Assembly (NCBI GenBank): GCA_001949185.1
Contig: BDGG01000001.1
Span: forward strand, 8,992,711-9,056,710
Direction of reading: 5' to 3'
DNA: 64,000 nucleotides
Source: Ramazzottius varieornatus
Lineage: Eukaryota > Animalia > Tardigrada
The position numbers were made by a program, and so were the translations under genes. The notes under the pieces are model-generated. The model had not been told where the DNA came from, did no database searches, and worked only from the letters and a program-made list of their open reading frames with translations. Positions 2,636 through 13,075 of this stretch are shown in pieces. Within the stretch, counting starts at the first letter, position 1. Each line of letters starts with the position of its first letter.

Positions 2636-5600
2636 AGAGGTTTGCTTGCTGTCCGTTACTCGGAATGTCACATTCAGTTTTGGAGAAGTCATAAGGGTCA
2701 TCTCTCACCGGTATCTTGGAAGGATTGTGCGCTGTTCACCCACCAGGGTACATAATGGCTACAAACCCCGAACTTGCACAGCACAGCACGTTACGACTTT
2801 CCCAGCGGCGCGTGTATAGTAAGTTATTGCACATAACAGAAATGTTTTTCCTCTTCCTGGTGCACCGTCAACGTAAAAAACTCCCGGAGTCTGACTGTCA
2901 ACTTTTTGTTGAATAAGCTGAAAAGTTTGGGTTTGTTCTCTGTTGAGTTGTCCGCGGGTGTCGGTGAATTTTTCAAGATTGGTCGTGCAGTTGTGCCGTT
3001 GTCGCTCTTTGTCGGTTTCGCTAAGGTTGTTGTGAGGTGAAGGTAGCGAGAACTCGTCCATTGTTCTACTGTAGCTTTCCAATCTAGCCGATGAACCCAG
3101 TAGCAAATGGTGTAGTGCTCTTTCGTAGGAAAGATTTTCACGTAACTTGAAATCCATCCCTATATATTGCTGGTGTTTTGAAAATAGGTTCAGTGCCGGA
3201 CCTCCTTCGGTTATCAGGACTATAAACAGAAAACGAAGTTGCGTGGGAGTACATAACCATTCTTTCGCCTCATCCATACAAATTTCGGCTTCCGATGTAT
3301 CATCCAAGAGACCCATAGCTTTTGCGCAGTCTGAATAAGTTTGGTATTTAATGCCGCTAATAGCGCACAGTTCTTTGAACGACCTCGCCGGTTTGTTTTG
3401 CAGCAATAATCGTAGGTACCAAAGTTCACCGCTTTGGAGACGCTTGACTTCCATTCTGGTTATGTGGAGACCTGTCCGTCGATGAACTGTTCCTGTGTTT
3501 GGTGCGGGCACTTTGTCAAACCAGATATATTGGGCAGAGCGAGCATTGGTTTGGTCTTCGCGTTTTACCGTCACCACAAACTTTTCATAATATTCCAAAT
3601 ATTTTAAATTTTCGAATAATGGGTCGTTCGGTCGGGCAAAGTAGCGATCAAGTTTGGAAAATCTTTCTTTCGCACTATCTCTCCAGTTCTTGTTCGAATC
3701 GTTGTAAACTACATAATTTTGGTCTTCGAAGTGAATAGGATAACTTAACACAGATGGTCTCTTCTTGTCAATTCAAAACTGAAAATACGCTAAACAGCTT
3801 CCGAAGCGGATAAGTATCGACCGTGAATGTAAAGCTTCGTTTTGTCTTTTGATATAGCGTTTAAGTAATCCAATCCCTTATACAGGTATTTGTACAGGTG
3901 AATAATCAAAGTCACGGACGCGGCTAACTCCAAATTTATGTGACAATCGAAAGCTATAAGCACGTCGGCATTATAAGGCTCAACATTCAGATCAGCTTCA
4001 TGGCGCCGGCGATATTGAGGATAGCCAGCATCGTTGATATATGTTTCTCCGTTGATACGTTTGGGGTATCTGTAGTGACAACTTCTCTGCGTTTTTTCCT
4101 TCTCTGTGCGGCAGCATTGATCGGGATAATGTTTATGCAACATGTGTTTCTGAACTGTCCGACGTAGTAACGGTTCTTCCGGTAGTTCAGCGCAGATAAC
4201 TTGGTCAATTTCTTCTGGCGTTTGTGGTTCTCACTCATTCTAACAGCGATATGAGCATGAGGGAGACCACGGGGTTGAAACTTTACCACAACGATTTTGC
4301 AGATTTGTTTCGCTTTGAAATATCTTGGCAAACATGCTTGAAACTGTTTCACGATTTCTGGACAGTCCGAAGCATTTTGACCAGAAAGTAATCTGCTGGT
4401 CATTTCCGGCCAGTTTGGGTTACATGTGAAGGTAGAAAAGTACGTTGGGTTTTTTAGTCGGCAGATTACGGCGAGCGCATCTGAGATCATCTGCTGATTA
4501 TGTTGGAAAGAACCAATAAAAGATGCGGGTAGGAACACGCGTCCATCGTTGTTATTAGATTGGGGATCGTTCTGTCGACAGATCTTGGACTGGTTATGAC
4601 ATATCCAACTTAAGCGTTGCTCCTCTATACAACTGAATATGTCCAGACAGAACTCGTTTAAAAATCTCCCCAGCGACATTAGTGCGACACAGCGAAGAAT
4701 GATTTGCCGGTAGAACATCATAACTGTAGTGCCTTTGGATTTCTCCTGTCTGTCGATGCTCCAGCCGGGCGTTCCCTCCGGGCAAATTACGATATAATGT
4801 AACGGCATAAATAAGGGAGATGTGACTTTGATAAACGTGGGACGGGTTTTGGTTTTTTTCCAGCAGACAACAGTTCTGTCTTTCAGTTCACCAGATGTTT
4901 CAGGGACGATAACAGCAACAATTTCATTTGTACTCCGAACTGCCAGTTCGGGCCGAGCTTCATTACTGGGTCGGTCAGCCAACATTTTGAACTGTCGTAA
5001 AAGTGGGTTACATTTGCCGAGAATATTTCGTAATTTAGTGACAATAGCTTCATCGAATTGCAGGTTTTTCATGATCTTCTGAGGATACTGTGCGTCATTG
5101 AAAAACCATCGTAATGGTCCTCACTCGTCGCTTCCTTGCATCATGCGGTGATAGGTTCTGCCCTTCAGAATGAGGTTGCTGGGCCCATCTTGCTGTTCGA
5201 AACATCCGGTGGTACCAATAGCCGACATCAACAATGAATTGTTATACTCTCGTGAATGAGTTCGAAGCCGAATGGATTTCAGATAGAGTCGTTTTAGAGC
5301 TGAAGGCAAGCTTGGAATTTCTATCGTCCGAAGGGTTCTTGTTATTATGACCGCAACAAAATCCCTTTGATTCCGTGTTCATTATTAATGCTTTGCACCC
5401 CGAGACACGTTATCCATCTCAACCGTAAGAGCATTAGCGTAAAGGTCACAGATGACTCATCGATCGAGATCACGATATAGCTTTGATTCCGTGTCTTGCA
5501 CGTGGTGCCTTTCATTGTGTGAGTTGATGTCCTCACTTGAGTATTCGCTTCAGAAGCTTTCCAGGTCACTCTCGTTAGGTCCATCAATTGCCGAATCAAA

Positions 5601-6895: not shown

Positions 6896-8203
6896 ATGTC
6901 TGCTTGCGAAGAAGCAGCACAGGATATCGAGGAGACGCTACTAAAAAAGCTACCGTACGACCCACAGTGGTACGACGTATGGCGCACGGTGTTTTCCTTC
7001 GTAGCAAACGACGATGCCACACTGTTTTCCCTCCTGGAAGCATCGACAAGTTTCCGAGCTTTTTTCCGACGGGATGTGCTGGAGCGAGTGGACTCGTCAC
7101 CTTACTGGAGAGATGCCTTGGTCAAGCGTGGAGTGCGCATCAGCACCCTGAGCTCCTTGTCGTCGCAGGAGGACTCGCCCTCTCTCACCTGGTTTGACCG
7201 TTATCGGCAGTATGCAAAGAGTATGGGATGCTACCGCTGTTTTTGGCGTCTCTCAAGTGGCCAGCCGGTTAACCCATCCGCATTTTACCGCAGTGATGTA
7301 GGGGAAAGAGACATCACAAACGATTCAGGATCACATCAAAACCCCGGCCACTTTTCAAAGGGACCTCCTCCCAGTGCTGACGTAAGTTCTGCTGCTGTCA
7401 CGTCATCCACTTTTACTCTACGTTTGTTGTCTAGCCGATTTCTCTGCGCTCACAGGTTGGCGATTGGAAGGTTGCAAGGTTTTGCGAGCGACAAACGGAC
7501 TTTGCCTACCTTATTGTCACCATCATCGGACCACCAGATACGCCCTACGTCGGAGGGCGCTTTCAGTTACTCATTGTCTTTCCTGAAAACTACCCTGCCG
7601 AGCCACCACAGGCTAAACTGCTGACCAAGATTGTCAGTCCGTACTTCACGGACCACGGGGACTTTTACTGTAAATACACCAACTTTGACGATGCAGCCGA
7701 TTACGAAACTTTCCTAGGATATCCTCCATACTGGCACACCATGTAAGTTTCTTCTTCTACCGCTATATGTAGCCACAGTGTACAAAATGCATTCCTGCAG
7801 GCCATCGCCCCAACTCAGTAACATCGATTAATGACAACAATCTAAGTTGGATTATCCAAAGGATGATCTGCAGGGATGCATTTTGTACACTGTATAGTGA
7901 GTTGTCTGGCTGATTTGATCCTGACCACTGCGGTTCACTTCTAGGTATTTTGTGGACCTCGTCCAGCAGTATCTGAGCTTTTCGTTCTGCCAAGACGCGC
8001 CCCCAGGCCTGATTGCCGTCCACAAGCAGCACACTGAACTGGTCAAGAGTAACAGAGCAGAATTTGCCCAGTTAGCGCGGAAGTGTACCCTGGAAAACGC
8101 CATGATTCACTGGAACATATCTTGCGAAGATTTCTGTTCAACCCGCTCTTCTTCCATCGACAGGGCTGCCCGTCACAAAACCAAGTTTCTTAAGTGCCAG
8201 TAG
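6896..8203 (+). CDS. F-box-like plus ubiquitin-conjugating enzyme (UBC/E2-variant) fusion protein, about 343 aa, 3 exons (6896-7381, 7456-7742, 7945-8203)
   Basis: Two GTAAGT...AG introns join the exons in frame with no stops. Exons 2-3 read IIGPPDTPYVGGRFQLLIVFPENYPAEPPQAKLLTKIVSPYFTDHGDFYC...ELVKSNRAEFAQLARKCTLENAM, a clear UBC fold. The N-terminal LLKKLPYDPQWYDVWRTVFSFV...LFSLLEASTSFRAF...YWR resembles an F-box; that part is less certain. Confidence 0.8.
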
Positions 8204-8804: not shown

Positions 8805-8928
8805 ACAAATGGTCGTCGCTGAATGATATATCACCTGCCACAATACAACGGTCTGCTAGTTTTCAACAAATGGTCATCGCTGAGTGATAAAGTATATCAC
8901 ATGCCACAATACAATGGTCTGATGAGTT
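8805..8928. repeat. Two-copy imperfect tandem duplication, about 61-65 bp unit
   Basis: ACAAATGGTCRTCGCTGARTGATA...TATCACMTGCCACAATACAAYGGTCTG occurs twice in tandem. Confidence 0.8.
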
Positions 8929-9051
8929 GTTTTACGTTTTAGATGTGCAAAAAGGAAAGTCTTTCCGGGTGTAGTTGTTTGTTTTTTTGTTTCGCTATCT
9001 TCTCGCTTTTTTGAGAACAGAATATTGTCTTTTCAGTAAAGGTTTCTATAT

Positions 9052-9626
9052 GAGCGGCCCAGGCGGNCACCGNTTTTACTAGCTATCAAAGTTTATAGCC
9101 ACATGTTTTGATAGCTATCAAAATCACAACCTACATACTTTGATACCTATCGAAATTGATAGCTATCAGTTTGTGTAGCTATCGAAACTGATAGCTATCA
9201 GTTTATGTAGCTATCAAAACTACTACCTACATGACTTTGCACCTATATCCTTCTTGTAGGCTCAAAATTGGCCTACTTCGAAAACGTCGGTTTCTACTTG
9301 CGTCTTTATATGGAAGTATAAAAGTGTAGTCATGACGTCATGAATTCAATGAGTTTACGTGAAAGAAATAACCACGCCCACCGGTTTTCTGTGTTCGGGT
9401 GGTAAGAGCGAAGTAGAAACCGACTTTTTCGAAGTAGGCCAATTTTGAGCCTACATGAAGAATATAGGTGCAAAGTCATGTAGGTAGTAGTTTTGATAGC
9501 TACACAAACTGATAGCTATCAGTTTCGATAGTTATCAAAGCATGTAGGTTGTGATTTTGGTAGCTATCAAAACATGTGGCTATGAACTTTGATAGCCAGT
9601 AAAAACGGTGACCGCCTGGGCCGCCC
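9052..9626. mobile_element. Non-autonomous fold-back DNA transposon (MITE) with about 230-260 bp terminal inverted repeats; possibly Sola-like
   Basis: Starts GAGCGGCCCAGGCGG and ends CCGCCTGGGCCGCCC. The arms are near-perfect reverse complements carrying repeated GATAGCTATC palindromes. Flanked by ATAT on both sides, a candidate 4-bp TSD. The superfamily call is tentative. Confidence 0.85.
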
Positions 9627-9644
9627 ATATTTCTACACGGTCTG

Positions 9645-12600
9645 CTAGTAATGATACTTGTTGGGATCAATCTGATAATAGTCTTTGTCGCTATCAAACT
9701 TTAGATACTTTTCCGCTCCAGCCGACTCGTCTAGAAGTTTGCACAAGTCTGTCTCCAGAACAGCAAACGAAGGTCTCTCTAGCGGCTCCTCTCTCCAGCA
9801 GCTCATCATAACATCGTATCTGAAATTCGGACAGTGCATTAAGGCCGATCCAAGCTGCACTGTATAAGAACTAAGGCCGAGTATGAAGCATGCCGGCTTC
9901 GCTTTCGAAGAGACTCACAGTTCTTGCGAGCAGTTTTGCGGACACCCCATTCGACTGCCTTTTCTCAGCTGGCTCAAAAGGTCATTATTGTTGATGGTTG
10001 GATAGGGCGTGCCGCCCATGGTGATGATCTCGAAGAGTACTACGCCGAATGACCACCTGAAATGCATCATCGGCGTACGTACAGTAGGTAGGTAGGTAAA
10101 GTACTACTGTATGGCGGTGTAAGAGCCAGACTTACACGTCGCTAGCAGGACTGAAGGCCAGATTGACGATAGATTCGATGGCCATCCATTTCAGAGGGAG
10201 CTTGCCAGGATTGAGCATGACGTAGTTGCTGTCCTCATCCAGATAGCGGGCCAAGCCAAAGTCGCCAATCTTGACGTGGTCGCTGTCTGTGACAAGTAAG
10301 TTGCGAGCTGCCAGGTCTCTGTGAATGTACCCTCGGCCATGCACATACTCCTACAAGCAAAACAACCGAGCGCCGACGTGCCGTTTATGTCAAGATTTAC
10401 GTTTTTGCTGAGCCTCAAAGCTGAATGTGATAGTGACAAAATCTGAACTACGGTTAGCAACTGACCACTTTCGTACCATGCCCAATGCTATTTGCCGAGA
10501 GAAGGACAGCAATGTTGTCAGCGTTAATTGGCTGACACAGGTTACGGGCAGATAGCTGGAGGAAACGGTGGCCGATTGAAGCGATATGGCTGTCTGACGC
10601 TTGGAGGAGAGATAGCCGCGCAGGTCGCCGAGGGCACAATATTCTAAAACTAGGAGGATGGGCTCGGAGGTCATGCAGGCACCAAGAAGACTGACGACTT
10701 GGCTGTGGCGACCCAGCGCCTTCATTAGTCTGATCTCGCGGAGGAATGCGTCTTTTTCTAGTAGGTCAGCACTTTCTGAAACGACCAACGACGCTGAGTC
10801 CATCAGCATTGGATTCACACTGATCAAAGTTCACTCTACTTTTACCTGGAAGTCGTTTGATAGCCACGGTGCAGTTGAAAAGGACATGTCCATGAGGCGC
10901 ATTCAGCGAACCCTCCACCACACCCTTCAACACTTCTCCGTAAGCACCGTTGCCGATGGAGGCCCCAAAGGCGATGCGCGAACGATCAAGTTCCCATCTG
11001 TCGGTGGCGACAGGCGGTGGTAGTGGTAACCTGCAATCTTCAGCATCAAGGCACAATAACAGGGAACAGAACCGATCTCACACACTAGTGGGCTTGAAGA
11101 GTGCTTACGTCTGACTGGTGCTGGTGCTGGAGGAGCTCTGACTGCTGTGCAGCGCAGTATTGGTGATACTGTATGAAGAGGAGGACGAGTTGGATCCCGA
11201 TGACATGGAAGGCAGCAGTTTGCTTGACAGTCTTTCTTGTAAGAGCCTTTGATATCTGCGGCAGCAGTAGACAGCCGTCACCGAAAAGCAGAGCAGAGCC
11301 AGCAACGGCCCAGCAATGGCTCCCGCTAACGCCCCCGGCGACAGCTCAGACTCCTCCTGTTCTTCGCCACGCTCAATCGTCTCTTCGGTACTCCTTTTCC
11401 CGTAAGCCTCTGTGACAAGTATCTCAGCCGCAGAAATCGTCTGGTTCGGGCCCAGTCGATGGTTGCTTCTTCCGCCAAACGAACGGTTCGAACGAATACA
11501 ACGACCGCCCTCCACCGAAGTGCACTCTGCAAAAAAGATAATAATCTATCCATGTACAAATTTTTCATCTTGCTGCTGTCTGGGGCTTCGCTGCGGATTG
11601 TCCGACTTTAAGAAAGTGCTTATTGTAGAAACCTCGGCAATTTGTCCTGATGTGACAGGCATGTGGTCGCAGACAGGATATATACCTAGCTTGTTGGTGT
11701 AGATAACATCCGGGCTTTTTTCTCCGCAAGTAGTGCTGTAGGAAATATGAAAGACATATCGGCACATCAGCTGGATATTCTCCACGTCAGCTCGTTCCTC
11801 ATTGGCAAATGCCTGGATGGAAGGCGCAGTGGCACTGACACAGCTGTAGTCCTTTACGATGCTGTAGTCGATGCTCAAGTGGTACTTGGCTACATCGGTA
11901 TTGTTAATTCCTTTCAGCAAGACAAAATGTATGGTCCTTCACACATCAAAGTGGGTCATCATGGATTTTTGGCCAAGACTGGAGAAAGGACCTACCTGCT
12001 GGCAGCTTCCATGACAAAAGTCCGCGAACTATTTTATTACTCATAGAAAGAGTGGACATGGTGATATTGGTCACTTGTAAGGAATTATTACGGCTGGAGG
12101 AATCTGTAAAACAACCAGTTTGACGCTAGATTCTACTGTAGTATGATTATCCTCGATCACTTGGCGTCTATAGTTACAGTTAAAAGTTTGATATGGTGAT
12201 GCCCCGACCATGCCATGAGAGTCCACGGCCACGAAACGGATGGTTTTGGACTGACATCGCCTCACGAAGGCCGCCTCCGGCTTGAGCAAAATTTCCTGCA
12301 AAAAAAAGGTTGTTAAAGACAGAGCTGCTGAAGTGCCGACTTTGCTGACGTCACGTCGGGAGCTGTCGGAACCGGGGCTTACCAGGGAAGGTACCCACGT
12401 CACTTCTTGCAAGGTTTCCGTGAAGTATAAAAGCGGCCCATCGATACTGGATGTCATGTTGGGGGGAAGGAGCCATTCGACACGGAAAGAGGCTAGAGAG
12501 CTCTGAAGGAGGAGGGAACCCCAGACCGGAGTTCGGTAGGCGTTGTCTTCTTGCGAGTCGGAGTTGGCCAGCAGGTCGCTCTCCGTATAGTCCATCTGGC

Positions 12601-13075
12601 ATAATGACGGAAGACATATCTGCAAAGTACGGACTCAAAACTGGTGCAACAAGCAGCGGAATTGGTAATACTAACCACTTTATGGCACGACATGGTAGTG
12701 TTGTGCCCGCACTCCGTTTCGCACTGAGCAAAAATCTGCAAGAAATCATCAACAAACAGTCAAAAAATGGACCCTTATCATTGCAACATATGGAAATGAC
12801 GATATTACAAATACAGCGCAGATTTCAGATATTTTCTGAAAACTACGCCCATAAACGTCGCCCACTTTGGGGTGACCATACTGGTGTACGCCGTACCAAA
12901 GCCATGTTCGTACCTTTGTGTTTTCATAAAGGCATCTGCTCACACACTTCGTCTTACAGATCAGATTTAAGGATAGGACATCTCGCTTGAAGTTCTGATT
13001 TAGTCCTTGCGAAAAGTCGAGATTGATTAAAAGCACAGTTATGATTACTCTTCCGCAACCGCAAATGGTACACAT
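9645..13075 (-). CDS. Receptor tyrosine kinase, FGFR/RET/Torso-like, multi-exon
   Basis: Signal-like N-terminus, Cys-rich start and TM segment ALAGAIAGPLLALLCFSVTAVYCC. Kinase motifs WELDRSRI, IGNGAYGEV, VAIK, IHRDLAARN, KIGDFGLAR, LPLKWMAIES, SDVWSFGVVLFEI and CWREEPLERPSF. Confidence 0.93.

What the first reader, a model, noticed from the sequence alone, without database searches (positions are those of the whole stretch)
6896..8203. F-box-like domain fused to an E2/UBC fold with a remodelled active site, hidden from the ORF track
Seen: three exons splice into one stop-free frame of about 343 aa. Its C-half is a clear UBC fold (GPPDTPYVGG.F.L.I.FP.NYP..PP...TKI; final helix ARKCTLENAM). The canonical HPN reads SPY and the catalytic-Cys position is Tyr, with a Cys one residue later (GDFYC). 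The N-terminus looks like an F-box. Established: F-boxes dock on Skp1 in SCF ligases, E2s normally arrive separately via Rbx1, and UEVs lack the Cys and act as ubiquitin-binding adaptors. Inference: this could be an SCF receptor that uses a pseudo-E2 to recognise ubiquitin or substrate, or one that carries its own E2. The gene is intact although it sits among dead transposons, head-to-head with a Helitron.
Basis: partly seen in the sequence, partly recalled or inferred. Interest (0 to 1): 0.85.

Follow-up and report, generated by a model that had tools for sequence, protein, structure and literature searches.

The report
Tardigrade Morgue-like F-box/pseudo-E2 gene
This is a real, already annotated tardigrade gene (RvY_03259) that joins an F-box-like domain to a catalytically dead E2 fold; the same design has been known since 2002 as Drosophila Morgue, so this is a divergent variant of a known kind.

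Summary
Three exons (6896-7381, 7456-7742, 7945-8203, +) give a 343-aa protein identical to the annotated Ramazzottius varieornatus protein RvY_03259. Its C-half passes Pfam UQ_con (E 1e-13). HPN reads SPY. Aligned to this genome's own E2s, the catalytic Cys position is Tyr233, and a Cys follows at +1.

All relatives have F or Y at +1 and the same Tyr. The family is therefore a pseudo-E2 (UEV), and the Cys is private to this copy.

The family is tiny: six representatives among 1.84 billion proteins. The three named ones come from three tardigrade genera.

The F-box reading rests on four weak lines that agree:
- sub-threshold Pfam F-box hits in two relatives;
- the top four of 48,161 fold matches are F-box regions (Z 3.8-4.5);
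- a Skp1 complex score of 0.59 against a best control of 0.01, which the tool rates weak;
- the nearest ESM Atlas clusters are arthropod F-box+UQ_con proteins.

The design is not new. Drosophila Morgue is a zinc finger + F-box + UEV protein that binds SkpA and K48 polyubiquitin. The tardigrade family lacks Morgue's zinc finger and its invariant Gly.

The window's copy is a shortened, divergent paralog of RvY_10695. RNA evidence could not be obtained. I found no earlier report of this family on other DNA in the scan.

The parts
6896..7381 (+). Exon 1, residues 1-162: N-terminal helical domain plus a disordered linker
   Evidence: Translation. 100% identical to P0001 residues 1-162. The AF2 model is helical over residues 3-120 and disordered over 131-156.
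6947..7075 (+). F-box-like core, about residues 18-60 (LP..YDVWRTVFSFV..DDATLFSLLEAS..FRAFF)
   Evidence: Relatives carry a canonical LPxD/ExW..I..YL motif with sub-threshold Pfam F-box / F-box-like hits. The top fold matches are F-box regions of Fbs2, FBXO3, FBXO31 and Cdc4. In this copy the LP is displaced by 5 residues.
7229..7240 (+). CxxC motif (C112, C115), invariant across the family
   Evidence: Invariant columns in alignments A4, A6 and A7. Function unknown.
7382..7455 (+). Intron 1 (74 nt, GTAAGT..CAG, phase 0)
   Evidence: Sequence. The paralog RvY_10695 has an intron at the same position and phase, two codons before the conserved DW.
7456..7742 (+). Exon 2, residues 163-258: UBC core strands and the active-site loop
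   Evidence: Pfam UQ_con E 1.3e-13. Best solved relative is UBE2K, E 1.5e-11.
7636..7644 (+). SPY in place of the E2 HPN motif
   Evidence: HMMER alignment to UBE2K. MAFFT alignment to the genome's own E2s. The family reads SP[YF].
7666..7671 (+). Tyr233 at the catalytic-Cys column, followed by Cys234 at +1
   Evidence: canonical G-x-V-C aligns with G-D-F-Y. Tyr is invariant in the family. The +1 residue is F or Y in all relatives and C only here.
7743..7944 (+). Intron 2 (202 nt, GTAAGT..TAG), holding a 32-nt inverted repeat
   Evidence: Reading through gives a stop right after the exon. The frame and family homology resume in exon 3. Inverted repeat 7775-7806 / 7862-7893. The paralog has no intron here.
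7945..8203 (+). Exon 3, residues 258-343 plus stop: C-terminal UBC helices and a private tail
   Evidence: Translation. UQ_con profile reaches position 138/140 at residue 304. The ARKCT.ENAM.HW helix is shared with RvY_10695.

Best explanation
RvY_03259 is a member of a small F-box/UEV family seen here only in tardigrades. The family has the same design as Drosophila Morgue.

How it most likely works:
- The N-terminal three-helix F-box-like module and its helical extension dock on Skp1, placing the protein in an SCF (Cul1-Rbx1) ligase.
- The C-terminal UBC fold cannot carry ubiquitin. It has Tyr at the Cys position and SPY for HPN.
- Instead it acts as the receptor end, binding ubiquitin, polyubiquitin or a substrate non-covalently, as UEVs and Morgue do.

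The copy in this window is a shortened, divergent DNA-level duplicate of the longer paralog RvY_10695. It lacks that gene's roughly 280-aa N-terminal region, has its Leu-Pro out of register, lacks the helix-1-like segment, gained an intron, and carries a private Cys next to the dead site.

Shown: gene structure, UBC fold, loss of the catalytic residues, the family and its narrow range.
Inferred: F-box function, Skp1 docking, ubiquitin reading.
For: Gene model and identity:
- The model matches the annotated protein.
- Intron 1 position and phase are shared with the paralog.

UBC fold and dead active site:
- UQ_con is over the cut-off.
- Tyr sits at the Cys column, and SP[YF] replaces HPN in every member.

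F-box:
- Pfam F-box / F-box-like / PRANC hits at E 0.02-0.05 fall on the same motif in two relatives.
- The N-domain model has pLDDT 68, and 78-91 over residues 31-80.
- Its four best matches among 48,161 chains are F-box regions in Skp1 complexes: Fbs2 Z 4.5 (rmsd 4.5, 68 aligned), FBXO3 Z 4.2, FBXO31 Z 4.0, Cdc4 Z 3.8. The same proteins appeared with the full-length model.

Skp1 complex:
- ipSAE 0.59, best control 0.01, rated 'weak support'. The runs agree in at least 66% of contacts, and partner pLDDT is at least 53.
- The mark was reached by 51 of 78 solved complexes and 2 of 108 mismatches. At 0.60 or under it was reached by only 5 of those 78 and by all 4 passing mismatches of 180.

Architecture and precedent:
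- The nearest named ESM Atlas clusters are arthropod F-box+UQ_con proteins (0.92 and 0.91; 7 hits with that set).
- Morgue binds SkpA and K48 polyubiquitin (PMC3787007).
- No other F-box hit lies near a UQ_con hit in this genome.
Against: - No Pfam F-box hit in this protein, even at E 10.
- A profile of the N-domain finds nothing in PDB sequences.
- Foldseek finds nothing significant.
- All fold Z scores are under 5, a range the tool calls common for helical models.
- The tool itself rates the complex score as more often wrong than right unless the guess was likely beforehand. It may also reflect memory of solved Skp1-F-box complexes.
- The Leu-Pro of this copy is displaced.
- No RNA evidence was obtained.
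- No Morgue sequence could be fetched, so the likeness to Morgue rests on architecture and on cluster-level Atlas leads.
Confidence: 0.62

Rival explanations
1. A decaying or repurposed paralog. The family is F-box/UEV, but this copy no longer docks on Skp1, because its Leu-Pro is displaced and its N-terminus truncated. It either acts as a free UEV-like protein outside SCF or is on its way to becoming a pseudogene.
For: - At the LP position of the relatives this copy reads QW, with an LP five residues upstream.
- It lacks the GRI..E..L.R helix-1-like segment and the FC before DW that relatives keep.
- A third copy, on C5, is already frameshifted twice.
- Only one species is known to have this short copy.
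- In Drosophila the Morgue F-box is dispensable for the over-expression phenotypes (PMC3787007).
Against: - 343 codons across three exons are still open, with good splice sites.
- 54 columns are invariant across all four full-length family members aligned, this copy included.
- The Skp1 complex test was run on this very copy and passed the mark, though weakly.
Confidence: 0.22
2. An F-box protein that carries its own working E2. Cys234 would take ubiquitin as a thioester, so the SCF would need no separate E2.
For: - A Cys lies one residue after the canonical position.
- With UBE2K-type spacing from the HPN motif the Cys falls in register. This is my own count from the UBE2K sequence as I recall it; the printed alignment ends before the Cys.
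Against: - The conserved Gly anchors the alignment, so that Tyr, not Cys, occupies the catalytic column.
- In canonical E2s the +1 residue is an Ile or Leu. From my own knowledge of E2 structures, that side chain points into the core.
- No relative has the Cys.
- The HPN His and Asn are both lost.
- No helix 1 for E1 or RING contact is recognisable.
Confidence: 0.04
3. The N-terminal domain is not an F-box at all. It would be a lineage-specific helical domain, and the likeness is chance in a short helical motif. The protein would then be a UEV with an unrelated N-terminal extension.
For: - No profile hit over any threshold in any member.
- Nothing from the PDB profile search or from Foldseek.
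- Z under 5.
- The Atlas notes that scores near 0.9 occur for 4-10% of shuffled proteins.
Against: Four methods of different kinds point to the same family and the same 40 residues. F-box chains fill ranks 1-4 of 48,161. The controls in the complex test scored 0.00-0.01.
Confidence: 0.12

Closest known systems
Drosophila Morgue (CG15437) and its invertebrate orthologs, as described in PMC3787007 and the Mol Biol Evol 2009 paper it cites
   Same: - An F-box followed by a C-terminal UBC fold that lacks the catalytic Cys.
- Length class: Atlas clusters of 246-485 aa, Morgue 491 aa, this protein 343 aa, its paralog 649 aa.
- Predicted Skp1 docking. Morgue binds SkpA in vivo.
- Found in Ecdysozoa.
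   Different: - No CX2CX12CX2C zinc finger in any family member.
- The Cys column holds an invariant Tyr, not Morgue's invariant Gly.
- HPN is also lost.
- The family carries a CxxC motif between the F-box and the UEV.
UEV proteins (Mms2/Uev1, TSG101)
   Same: A UBC fold without the catalytic Cys, which binds ubiquitin non-covalently. From my memory, TSG101 also has Tyr at the Cys position.
   Different: Those have no F-box. Mms2/Uev1 work as partners of Ubc13, and TSG101 works in ESCRT-I. No sequence-level subfamily link was tested.
Canonical E2s with an insertion after the active site (UBE2G / Cdc34-type); best solved sequence matches are UBE2K and UBE2G1
   Same: - The GPP.TPY.GG.F.L...FP..YP..PP core, 47% identical to an E2 of the same genome over 51 aligned residues.
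- A loop insertion after the active site, of similar length to that of the genome's UBE2G-like E2s.
   Different: No Cys, no HPN, no recognisable helix 1 in this copy, and an N-terminal F-box-like domain.
E2/E3 hybrids and E3s with pseudo-E2 folds (UBE2O, BIRC6, FANCL). Named from my own knowledge, not tested.
   Same: A UBC-type fold built into a ligase component.
   Different: UBE2O and BIRC6 keep an active Cys. FANCL pairs its pseudo-E2 folds with a RING, not an F-box.

Membership tests
UBC / E2 superfamily (Pfam PF00179 UQ_con) | Profile match over the curated cut-off, covering the UBC core | tested here: met
   Exon 2: 51.2 bits against a cut-off of 27, E 1.3e-13. P0001: profile positions 23-138 of 140.
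Active E2 enzymes | Catalytic Cys in the G-x-[IV]-C column | tested here: not met
   Tyr233 aligns with the Cys of four E2s of the same genome. Cys234 is at +1 and only in this copy.
Active E2 enzymes | HPN motif | tested here: not met
   SPY here, SP[YF] in the family.
UEV (E2 variants) | UBC fold lacking the catalytic Cys | tested here: met
UEV (E2 variants) | Non-covalent ubiquitin binding | not testable with these tools
   Needs a binding assay.
F-box (Pfam PF00646 / PF12937) | Profile match over the curated cut-off | tested here: not met
   No hit in P0001 or exon 1 at E up to 10. Relatives P0002 and P0004 score 14-14.5 bits (cut-offs 20.5 and 24.3), E 0.03-0.05, on the homologous motif.
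F-box | Leu-Pro just before helix 1, then the hydrophobic pattern of three helices | tested here: inconclusive
   Relatives have LP[FL][DE][VLI]W..[IV]L.Y[LV]. This copy has QW there and an LP five residues upstream. The rest of the pattern is kept.
F-box | Three-helix F-box fold | tested here: inconclusive
   Ranks 1-4 of 48,161 chains are F-box regions, but Z is only 3.8-4.5. Foldseek best is Cdc4 at E 4.2.
F-box | Binds Skp1 | tested here: inconclusive
   Predicted complex 0.59 against a best control of 0.01, verdict 'weak support'. No experiment.
Morgue | N-terminal C4 zinc finger CX2CX12CX2C | tested here: not met
   A pattern search of all seven family proteins finds none. P0006 has a loose C-x-C-x15-C-x2-H upstream of its F-box.
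Morgue | Gly at the E2 active-site position | tested here: not met
   Invariant Tyr.
Morgue | Domain order: F-box, then C-terminal UEV | tested here: met
Morgue | F-box with five conserved Trp | tested here: inconclusive
   This copy has 5 Trp in the N-domain and relatives have 3-4; the four-member alignment keeps two invariant, W29 and W99. They cannot be placed against Morgue without its sequence.
Morgue | Sequence-level orthology (reciprocal best hit, or a tree with other E2/UEV families) | not tested
Only cluster-level Atlas leads exist.

The most novel reading that the evidence does not exclude
The tardigrade F-box/UEV family arose independently of Morgue, as a second invention of 'an SCF receptor whose business end is a dead E2'. 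It would use a Tyr-type UEV that reads ubiquitin chains. The copy in this window would have gone further: it regained a cysteine beside the dead site and shed the E1/E3-binding helix, giving a Skp1-tethered UBC fold with a new chemistry, such as a redox-sensitive or thioester-competent one.
Probability: 0.08. Interest if true: 0.6.

Novelty: new variant of a known kind. Interest (0 to 1): 0.3.

Why it matters
Morgue is a rare case where an E3 adaptor module and an E2 fold sit in one chain, and its biochemical role is still unsettled. A tardigrade lineage keeps the architecture but swaps both supposedly invariant Morgue hallmarks: there is no zinc finger, and Tyr replaces Gly. That shows which parts of the design are dispensable. 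The two paralogs, one long and one short, form a natural deletion series for testing Skp1 and ubiquitin binding. It does not open a new class of system, and the gene is already in public annotation as an uncharacterised 'UBC core domain-containing protein'.

Tried and rejected
RNA evidence

Gene structures of orthologs

Joined protein
Exons were searched one by one by reference. The full-length sequence I used is the database's own record, P0001, returned.

Searches that gave nothing
- PDB profile search with the N-domain alignment.
- Foldseek with the N-domain model.
- Literature search for the locus tags.
- The Morgue evolution paper (PMC2766937) is not held.

Full-length model
- The full-length AF2 model with 7 sequences was poor (pLDDT 43). 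I used it only as a pointer.

Skp1 complex prediction
- The verdict was 'weak support'. I report it as such, not as proof.

Helitron capture of the gene: considered and rejected
- The 1.8 kb between the Helitron remnant and the ATG is unique in the genome.

Intron 2 as a copy of an abundant MITE: rejected
- It has no other copy in the genome.

Full report
**What is there**

On the + strand, an ATG at 6896 opens a 486-nt exon. A 74-nt intron follows (GTAAGT..CAG), then a 287-nt exon, a 202-nt intron (GTAAGT..TAG) and a 259-nt exon that ends at the stop at 8201-8203. The exons translate to 162, 95 and 85 residues, joined by one split ATG codon, which makes 343 aa.

A HMMER search of exon 1 against 1.84 billion representatives returned a 343-aa database protein, P0001, identical over residues 1-162. 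It is GAU90905.1, RvY_03259 of the tardigrade Ramazzottius varieornatus, named 'hypothetical protein' or 'UBC core domain-containing protein'. From there on I used that record as the full-length sequence. The gene is real at the sequence level and already annotated. It is hidden only from a naive ORF list.

**The E2 half**

Exon 2 alone passes Pfam UQ_con (E 1.3e-13, 51 bits, cut-off 27). On P0001 the match covers profile positions 23-138 of 140. The best solved relatives are UBE2K and UBE2G1.

I aligned the domain with four canonical E2s taken from the same genome. The conserved Gly of G-x-V-C lines up with the Gly of G-D-F-Y, so the catalytic column holds Tyr233 and the Cys sits at +1. HPN is SPY.

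**The family**

Only six representatives in 1.84 billion proteins match exon 1 at E below 1e-3:
- the query itself;
- Hypsibius exemplaris BV898_08449 (608 aa);
- Paramacrobiotus metropolitanus LOC129593745 (366 aa);
- an 833-aa protein whose C-part is garbled;
- two fragments from run assemblies.

A profile search added RvY_10695 (649 aa), a paralog on contig 5 of the same genome.

A third copy, at C5:2303999-2304690, needs two frameshifts and is probably a pseudogene.

Every member reads SP[YF] and H-G-D-F-Y. The residue after the Tyr is F or Y everywhere except in RvY_03259. The family is thus a UEV-type pseudo-E2, and the Cys is a private change of this copy.

**The N-terminal half**

Neither exon 1 nor P0001 hits any F-box model, even at E 10. 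Two relatives do, below threshold, on the homologous motif: F-box at E 0.034 and F-box-like at 0.046 in the Hypsibius protein, and F-box-like 0.033, F-box 0.046 and PRANC 0.024 in a fragment. The relatives show a textbook start, LP-[FL]-[DE]-[VLI]-W..[IV]L.Y[LV]..[DN]D. In RvY_03259 the residues at the LP position are QW, and an LP lies five residues upstream.

A profile of the N-domain finds nothing in PDB sequences. The full-length AF2 model was poor (pLDDT 43). The N-domain alone gave pLDDT 68, with 78-91 over residues 31-80. Foldseek found nothing significant.

The exhaustive structural search put four F-box proteins, each aligned at its F-box and linker in a Skp1 complex, at ranks 1-4 of 48,161 chains:
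- Fbs2: Z 4.5, rmsd 4.5, 68 aligned;
- FBXO3: Z 4.2, rmsd 3.3, 58 aligned;
- FBXO31: Z 4.0;
- Cdc4: Z 3.8.

FBXW8 came at rank 9 and beta-TrCP1 at rank 39. The Z values are low in absolute terms. The weight lies in which proteins fill the top.

The genome has five Skp1 loci. I took a 174-aa Skp1 that is 97% identical to the best locus over its last exon and folded it with residues 8-128 of P0001. The result was:
- Score 0.59, best of three controls 0.01, verdict 'weak support'.
- The runs agree in at least 66% of contacts, and partner pLDDT is at least 53.
- The mark was reached by 51 of 78 solved complexes and 2 of 108 mismatches. At 0.60 or under it was reached by only 5 of the 78 and by all 4 passing mismatches of 180.
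- A pass may reflect memory of solved Skp1-F-box complexes.

Finally, the nearest named ESM Atlas clusters to P0001 are arthropod clusters that carry both UQ_con and F-box. They score 0.92 and 0.91, and seven hits share that set. The N-terminal 135 residues alone also land among F-box clusters, at lead level.

Four different kinds of test, each weak, point to the same 40 residues and the same family. I put the F-box reading at about 0.8 for the family, and somewhat less for working Skp1 docking in this copy.

**Known counterpart**

The Atlas lead led me to Drosophila Morgue. According to PMC3787007, Morgue has:
- an N-terminal C4 zinc finger (CX2CX12CX2C);
- a central F-box that typically holds five conserved Trp;
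- a C-terminal UEV with an invariant Gly at the Cys position.

The paper also reports that Morgue is found in a restricted set of Lophotrochozoa, Platyzoa and Ecdysozoa. [quoted passage not shown]

The tardigrade family shares the domain order and the predicted Skp1 contact, but fails two published hallmarks. No member has the zinc-finger pattern, and the active-site column is Tyr, not Gly.

No other F-box hit lies near a UQ_con hit anywhere in this genome. If tardigrades have a Morgue counterpart, this family is the only candidate. I could not fetch a Morgue sequence, so orthology versus independent fusion is untested.

**This copy compared with its paralog**

RvY_03259 differs from RvY_10695 in these ways:
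- It lacks the roughly 280-aa N-terminal region.
- Its first residues match an upstream LPYD.QW motif of the paralog, joined directly to the F-box helix.
- It lacks the GRI..E..L.R segment that looks like UBC helix 1, and the FC before the conserved DW.

Intron 1 sits at the same codon and phase as the paralog's long intron. This supports the exon 1-2 junction and a DNA-level duplication rather than a retrocopy.

Intron 2 is absent from the paralog, and four residues are missing at that point. Read-through hits a stop at once, and homology resumes in frame in exon 3, so the intron is needed. It holds a 32-nt inverted repeat that is unique in the genome.

**Surroundings**

Upstream on the minus strand lie broken Helitron ORFs (Helitron_like_N and PIF1). 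The 1.8 kb between them and the ATG is unique, so nothing suggests that the Helitron captured the gene. Downstream lie a roughly 135-bp element with dozens of copies and a roughly 580-bp palindromic repeat.

**Mechanism and verdict**

The most likely role (0.62) is a Morgue-type SCF adaptor. The F-box-like module docks on Skp1, and the Tyr-type pseudo-E2 reads ubiquitin, ubiquitin chains or a substrate without catalysis.

Rivals:
- This copy has lost Skp1 docking, or is decaying (0.22).
- The N-domain is not an F-box (0.12).
- Cys234 makes it a working E2 (0.04).

The finding is a sound observation of a divergent variant of a known design. Interest is modest.

Noticed in passing
G000:C5:2303999-2304690 (L013:500-1240): A third family copy, with an F-box-like motif and an SPFF..HGDFYY core. 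It needs two frame changes within the N-domain, so it is probably a pseudogene. Its CFWRLS motif is closer to RvY_03259 than to RvY_10695.
   Followed up: partly
L012 (G000:C5:2440500-2444800); protein P0007 residues about 270-300 and 325-345: RvY_10695 carries two F-box-like starts, about 55 residues apart: LPYDIQWQIRKYV and LPFDLWRKILRYV. The N-terminus of RvY_03259 looks like the first start fused to the helix of the second, as if by an internal deletion.
   Followed up: partly
window 7743-7944: Intron 2 is missing from the paralog and contains a 32-nt inverted repeat (7775-7806 / 7862-7893, 91% complementary). The repeat has no other copy in the genome. This is a possible intron gain by insertion of a fold-back sequence.
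   Followed up: partly
window 7229-7240 and the homologous sites in P0002, P0006 and P0007: A CxxC motif (SMACF.CF.RL) between the F-box and the UEV is invariant in the family. A further Cys just before the conserved DW is kept in the relatives but lost here. This may be a metal site standing in for Morgue's zinc finger.
   Followed up: no
G000: C5:303778, C16:721619, C6:1845886, C5:341687, C1:5774150: Five Skp1 loci pass the Pfam cut-off in a 56-Mb genome. This is a small Skp1 expansion.
   Followed up: no
window 2759-5072 (-): A Helitron remnant, split into separate ORFs: Helitron_like_N at E 2e-23 and the start of a PIF1 helicase at E 2e-7.
   Followed up: partly
window 8912-9049 and 9048-9630: A roughly 135-bp element with dozens of copies at 76-89% identity across the genome, next to a roughly 580-bp repeat that matches its own reverse strand at 75%. 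ORF translations show X here, so ambiguous bases lie around 8939-9082.
   Followed up: no
window 10390-12755 (-): ORFs that look like the exons of a receptor tyrosine-kinase-type gene: a kinase-subdomain motif and a transmembrane stretch.
   Followed up: no
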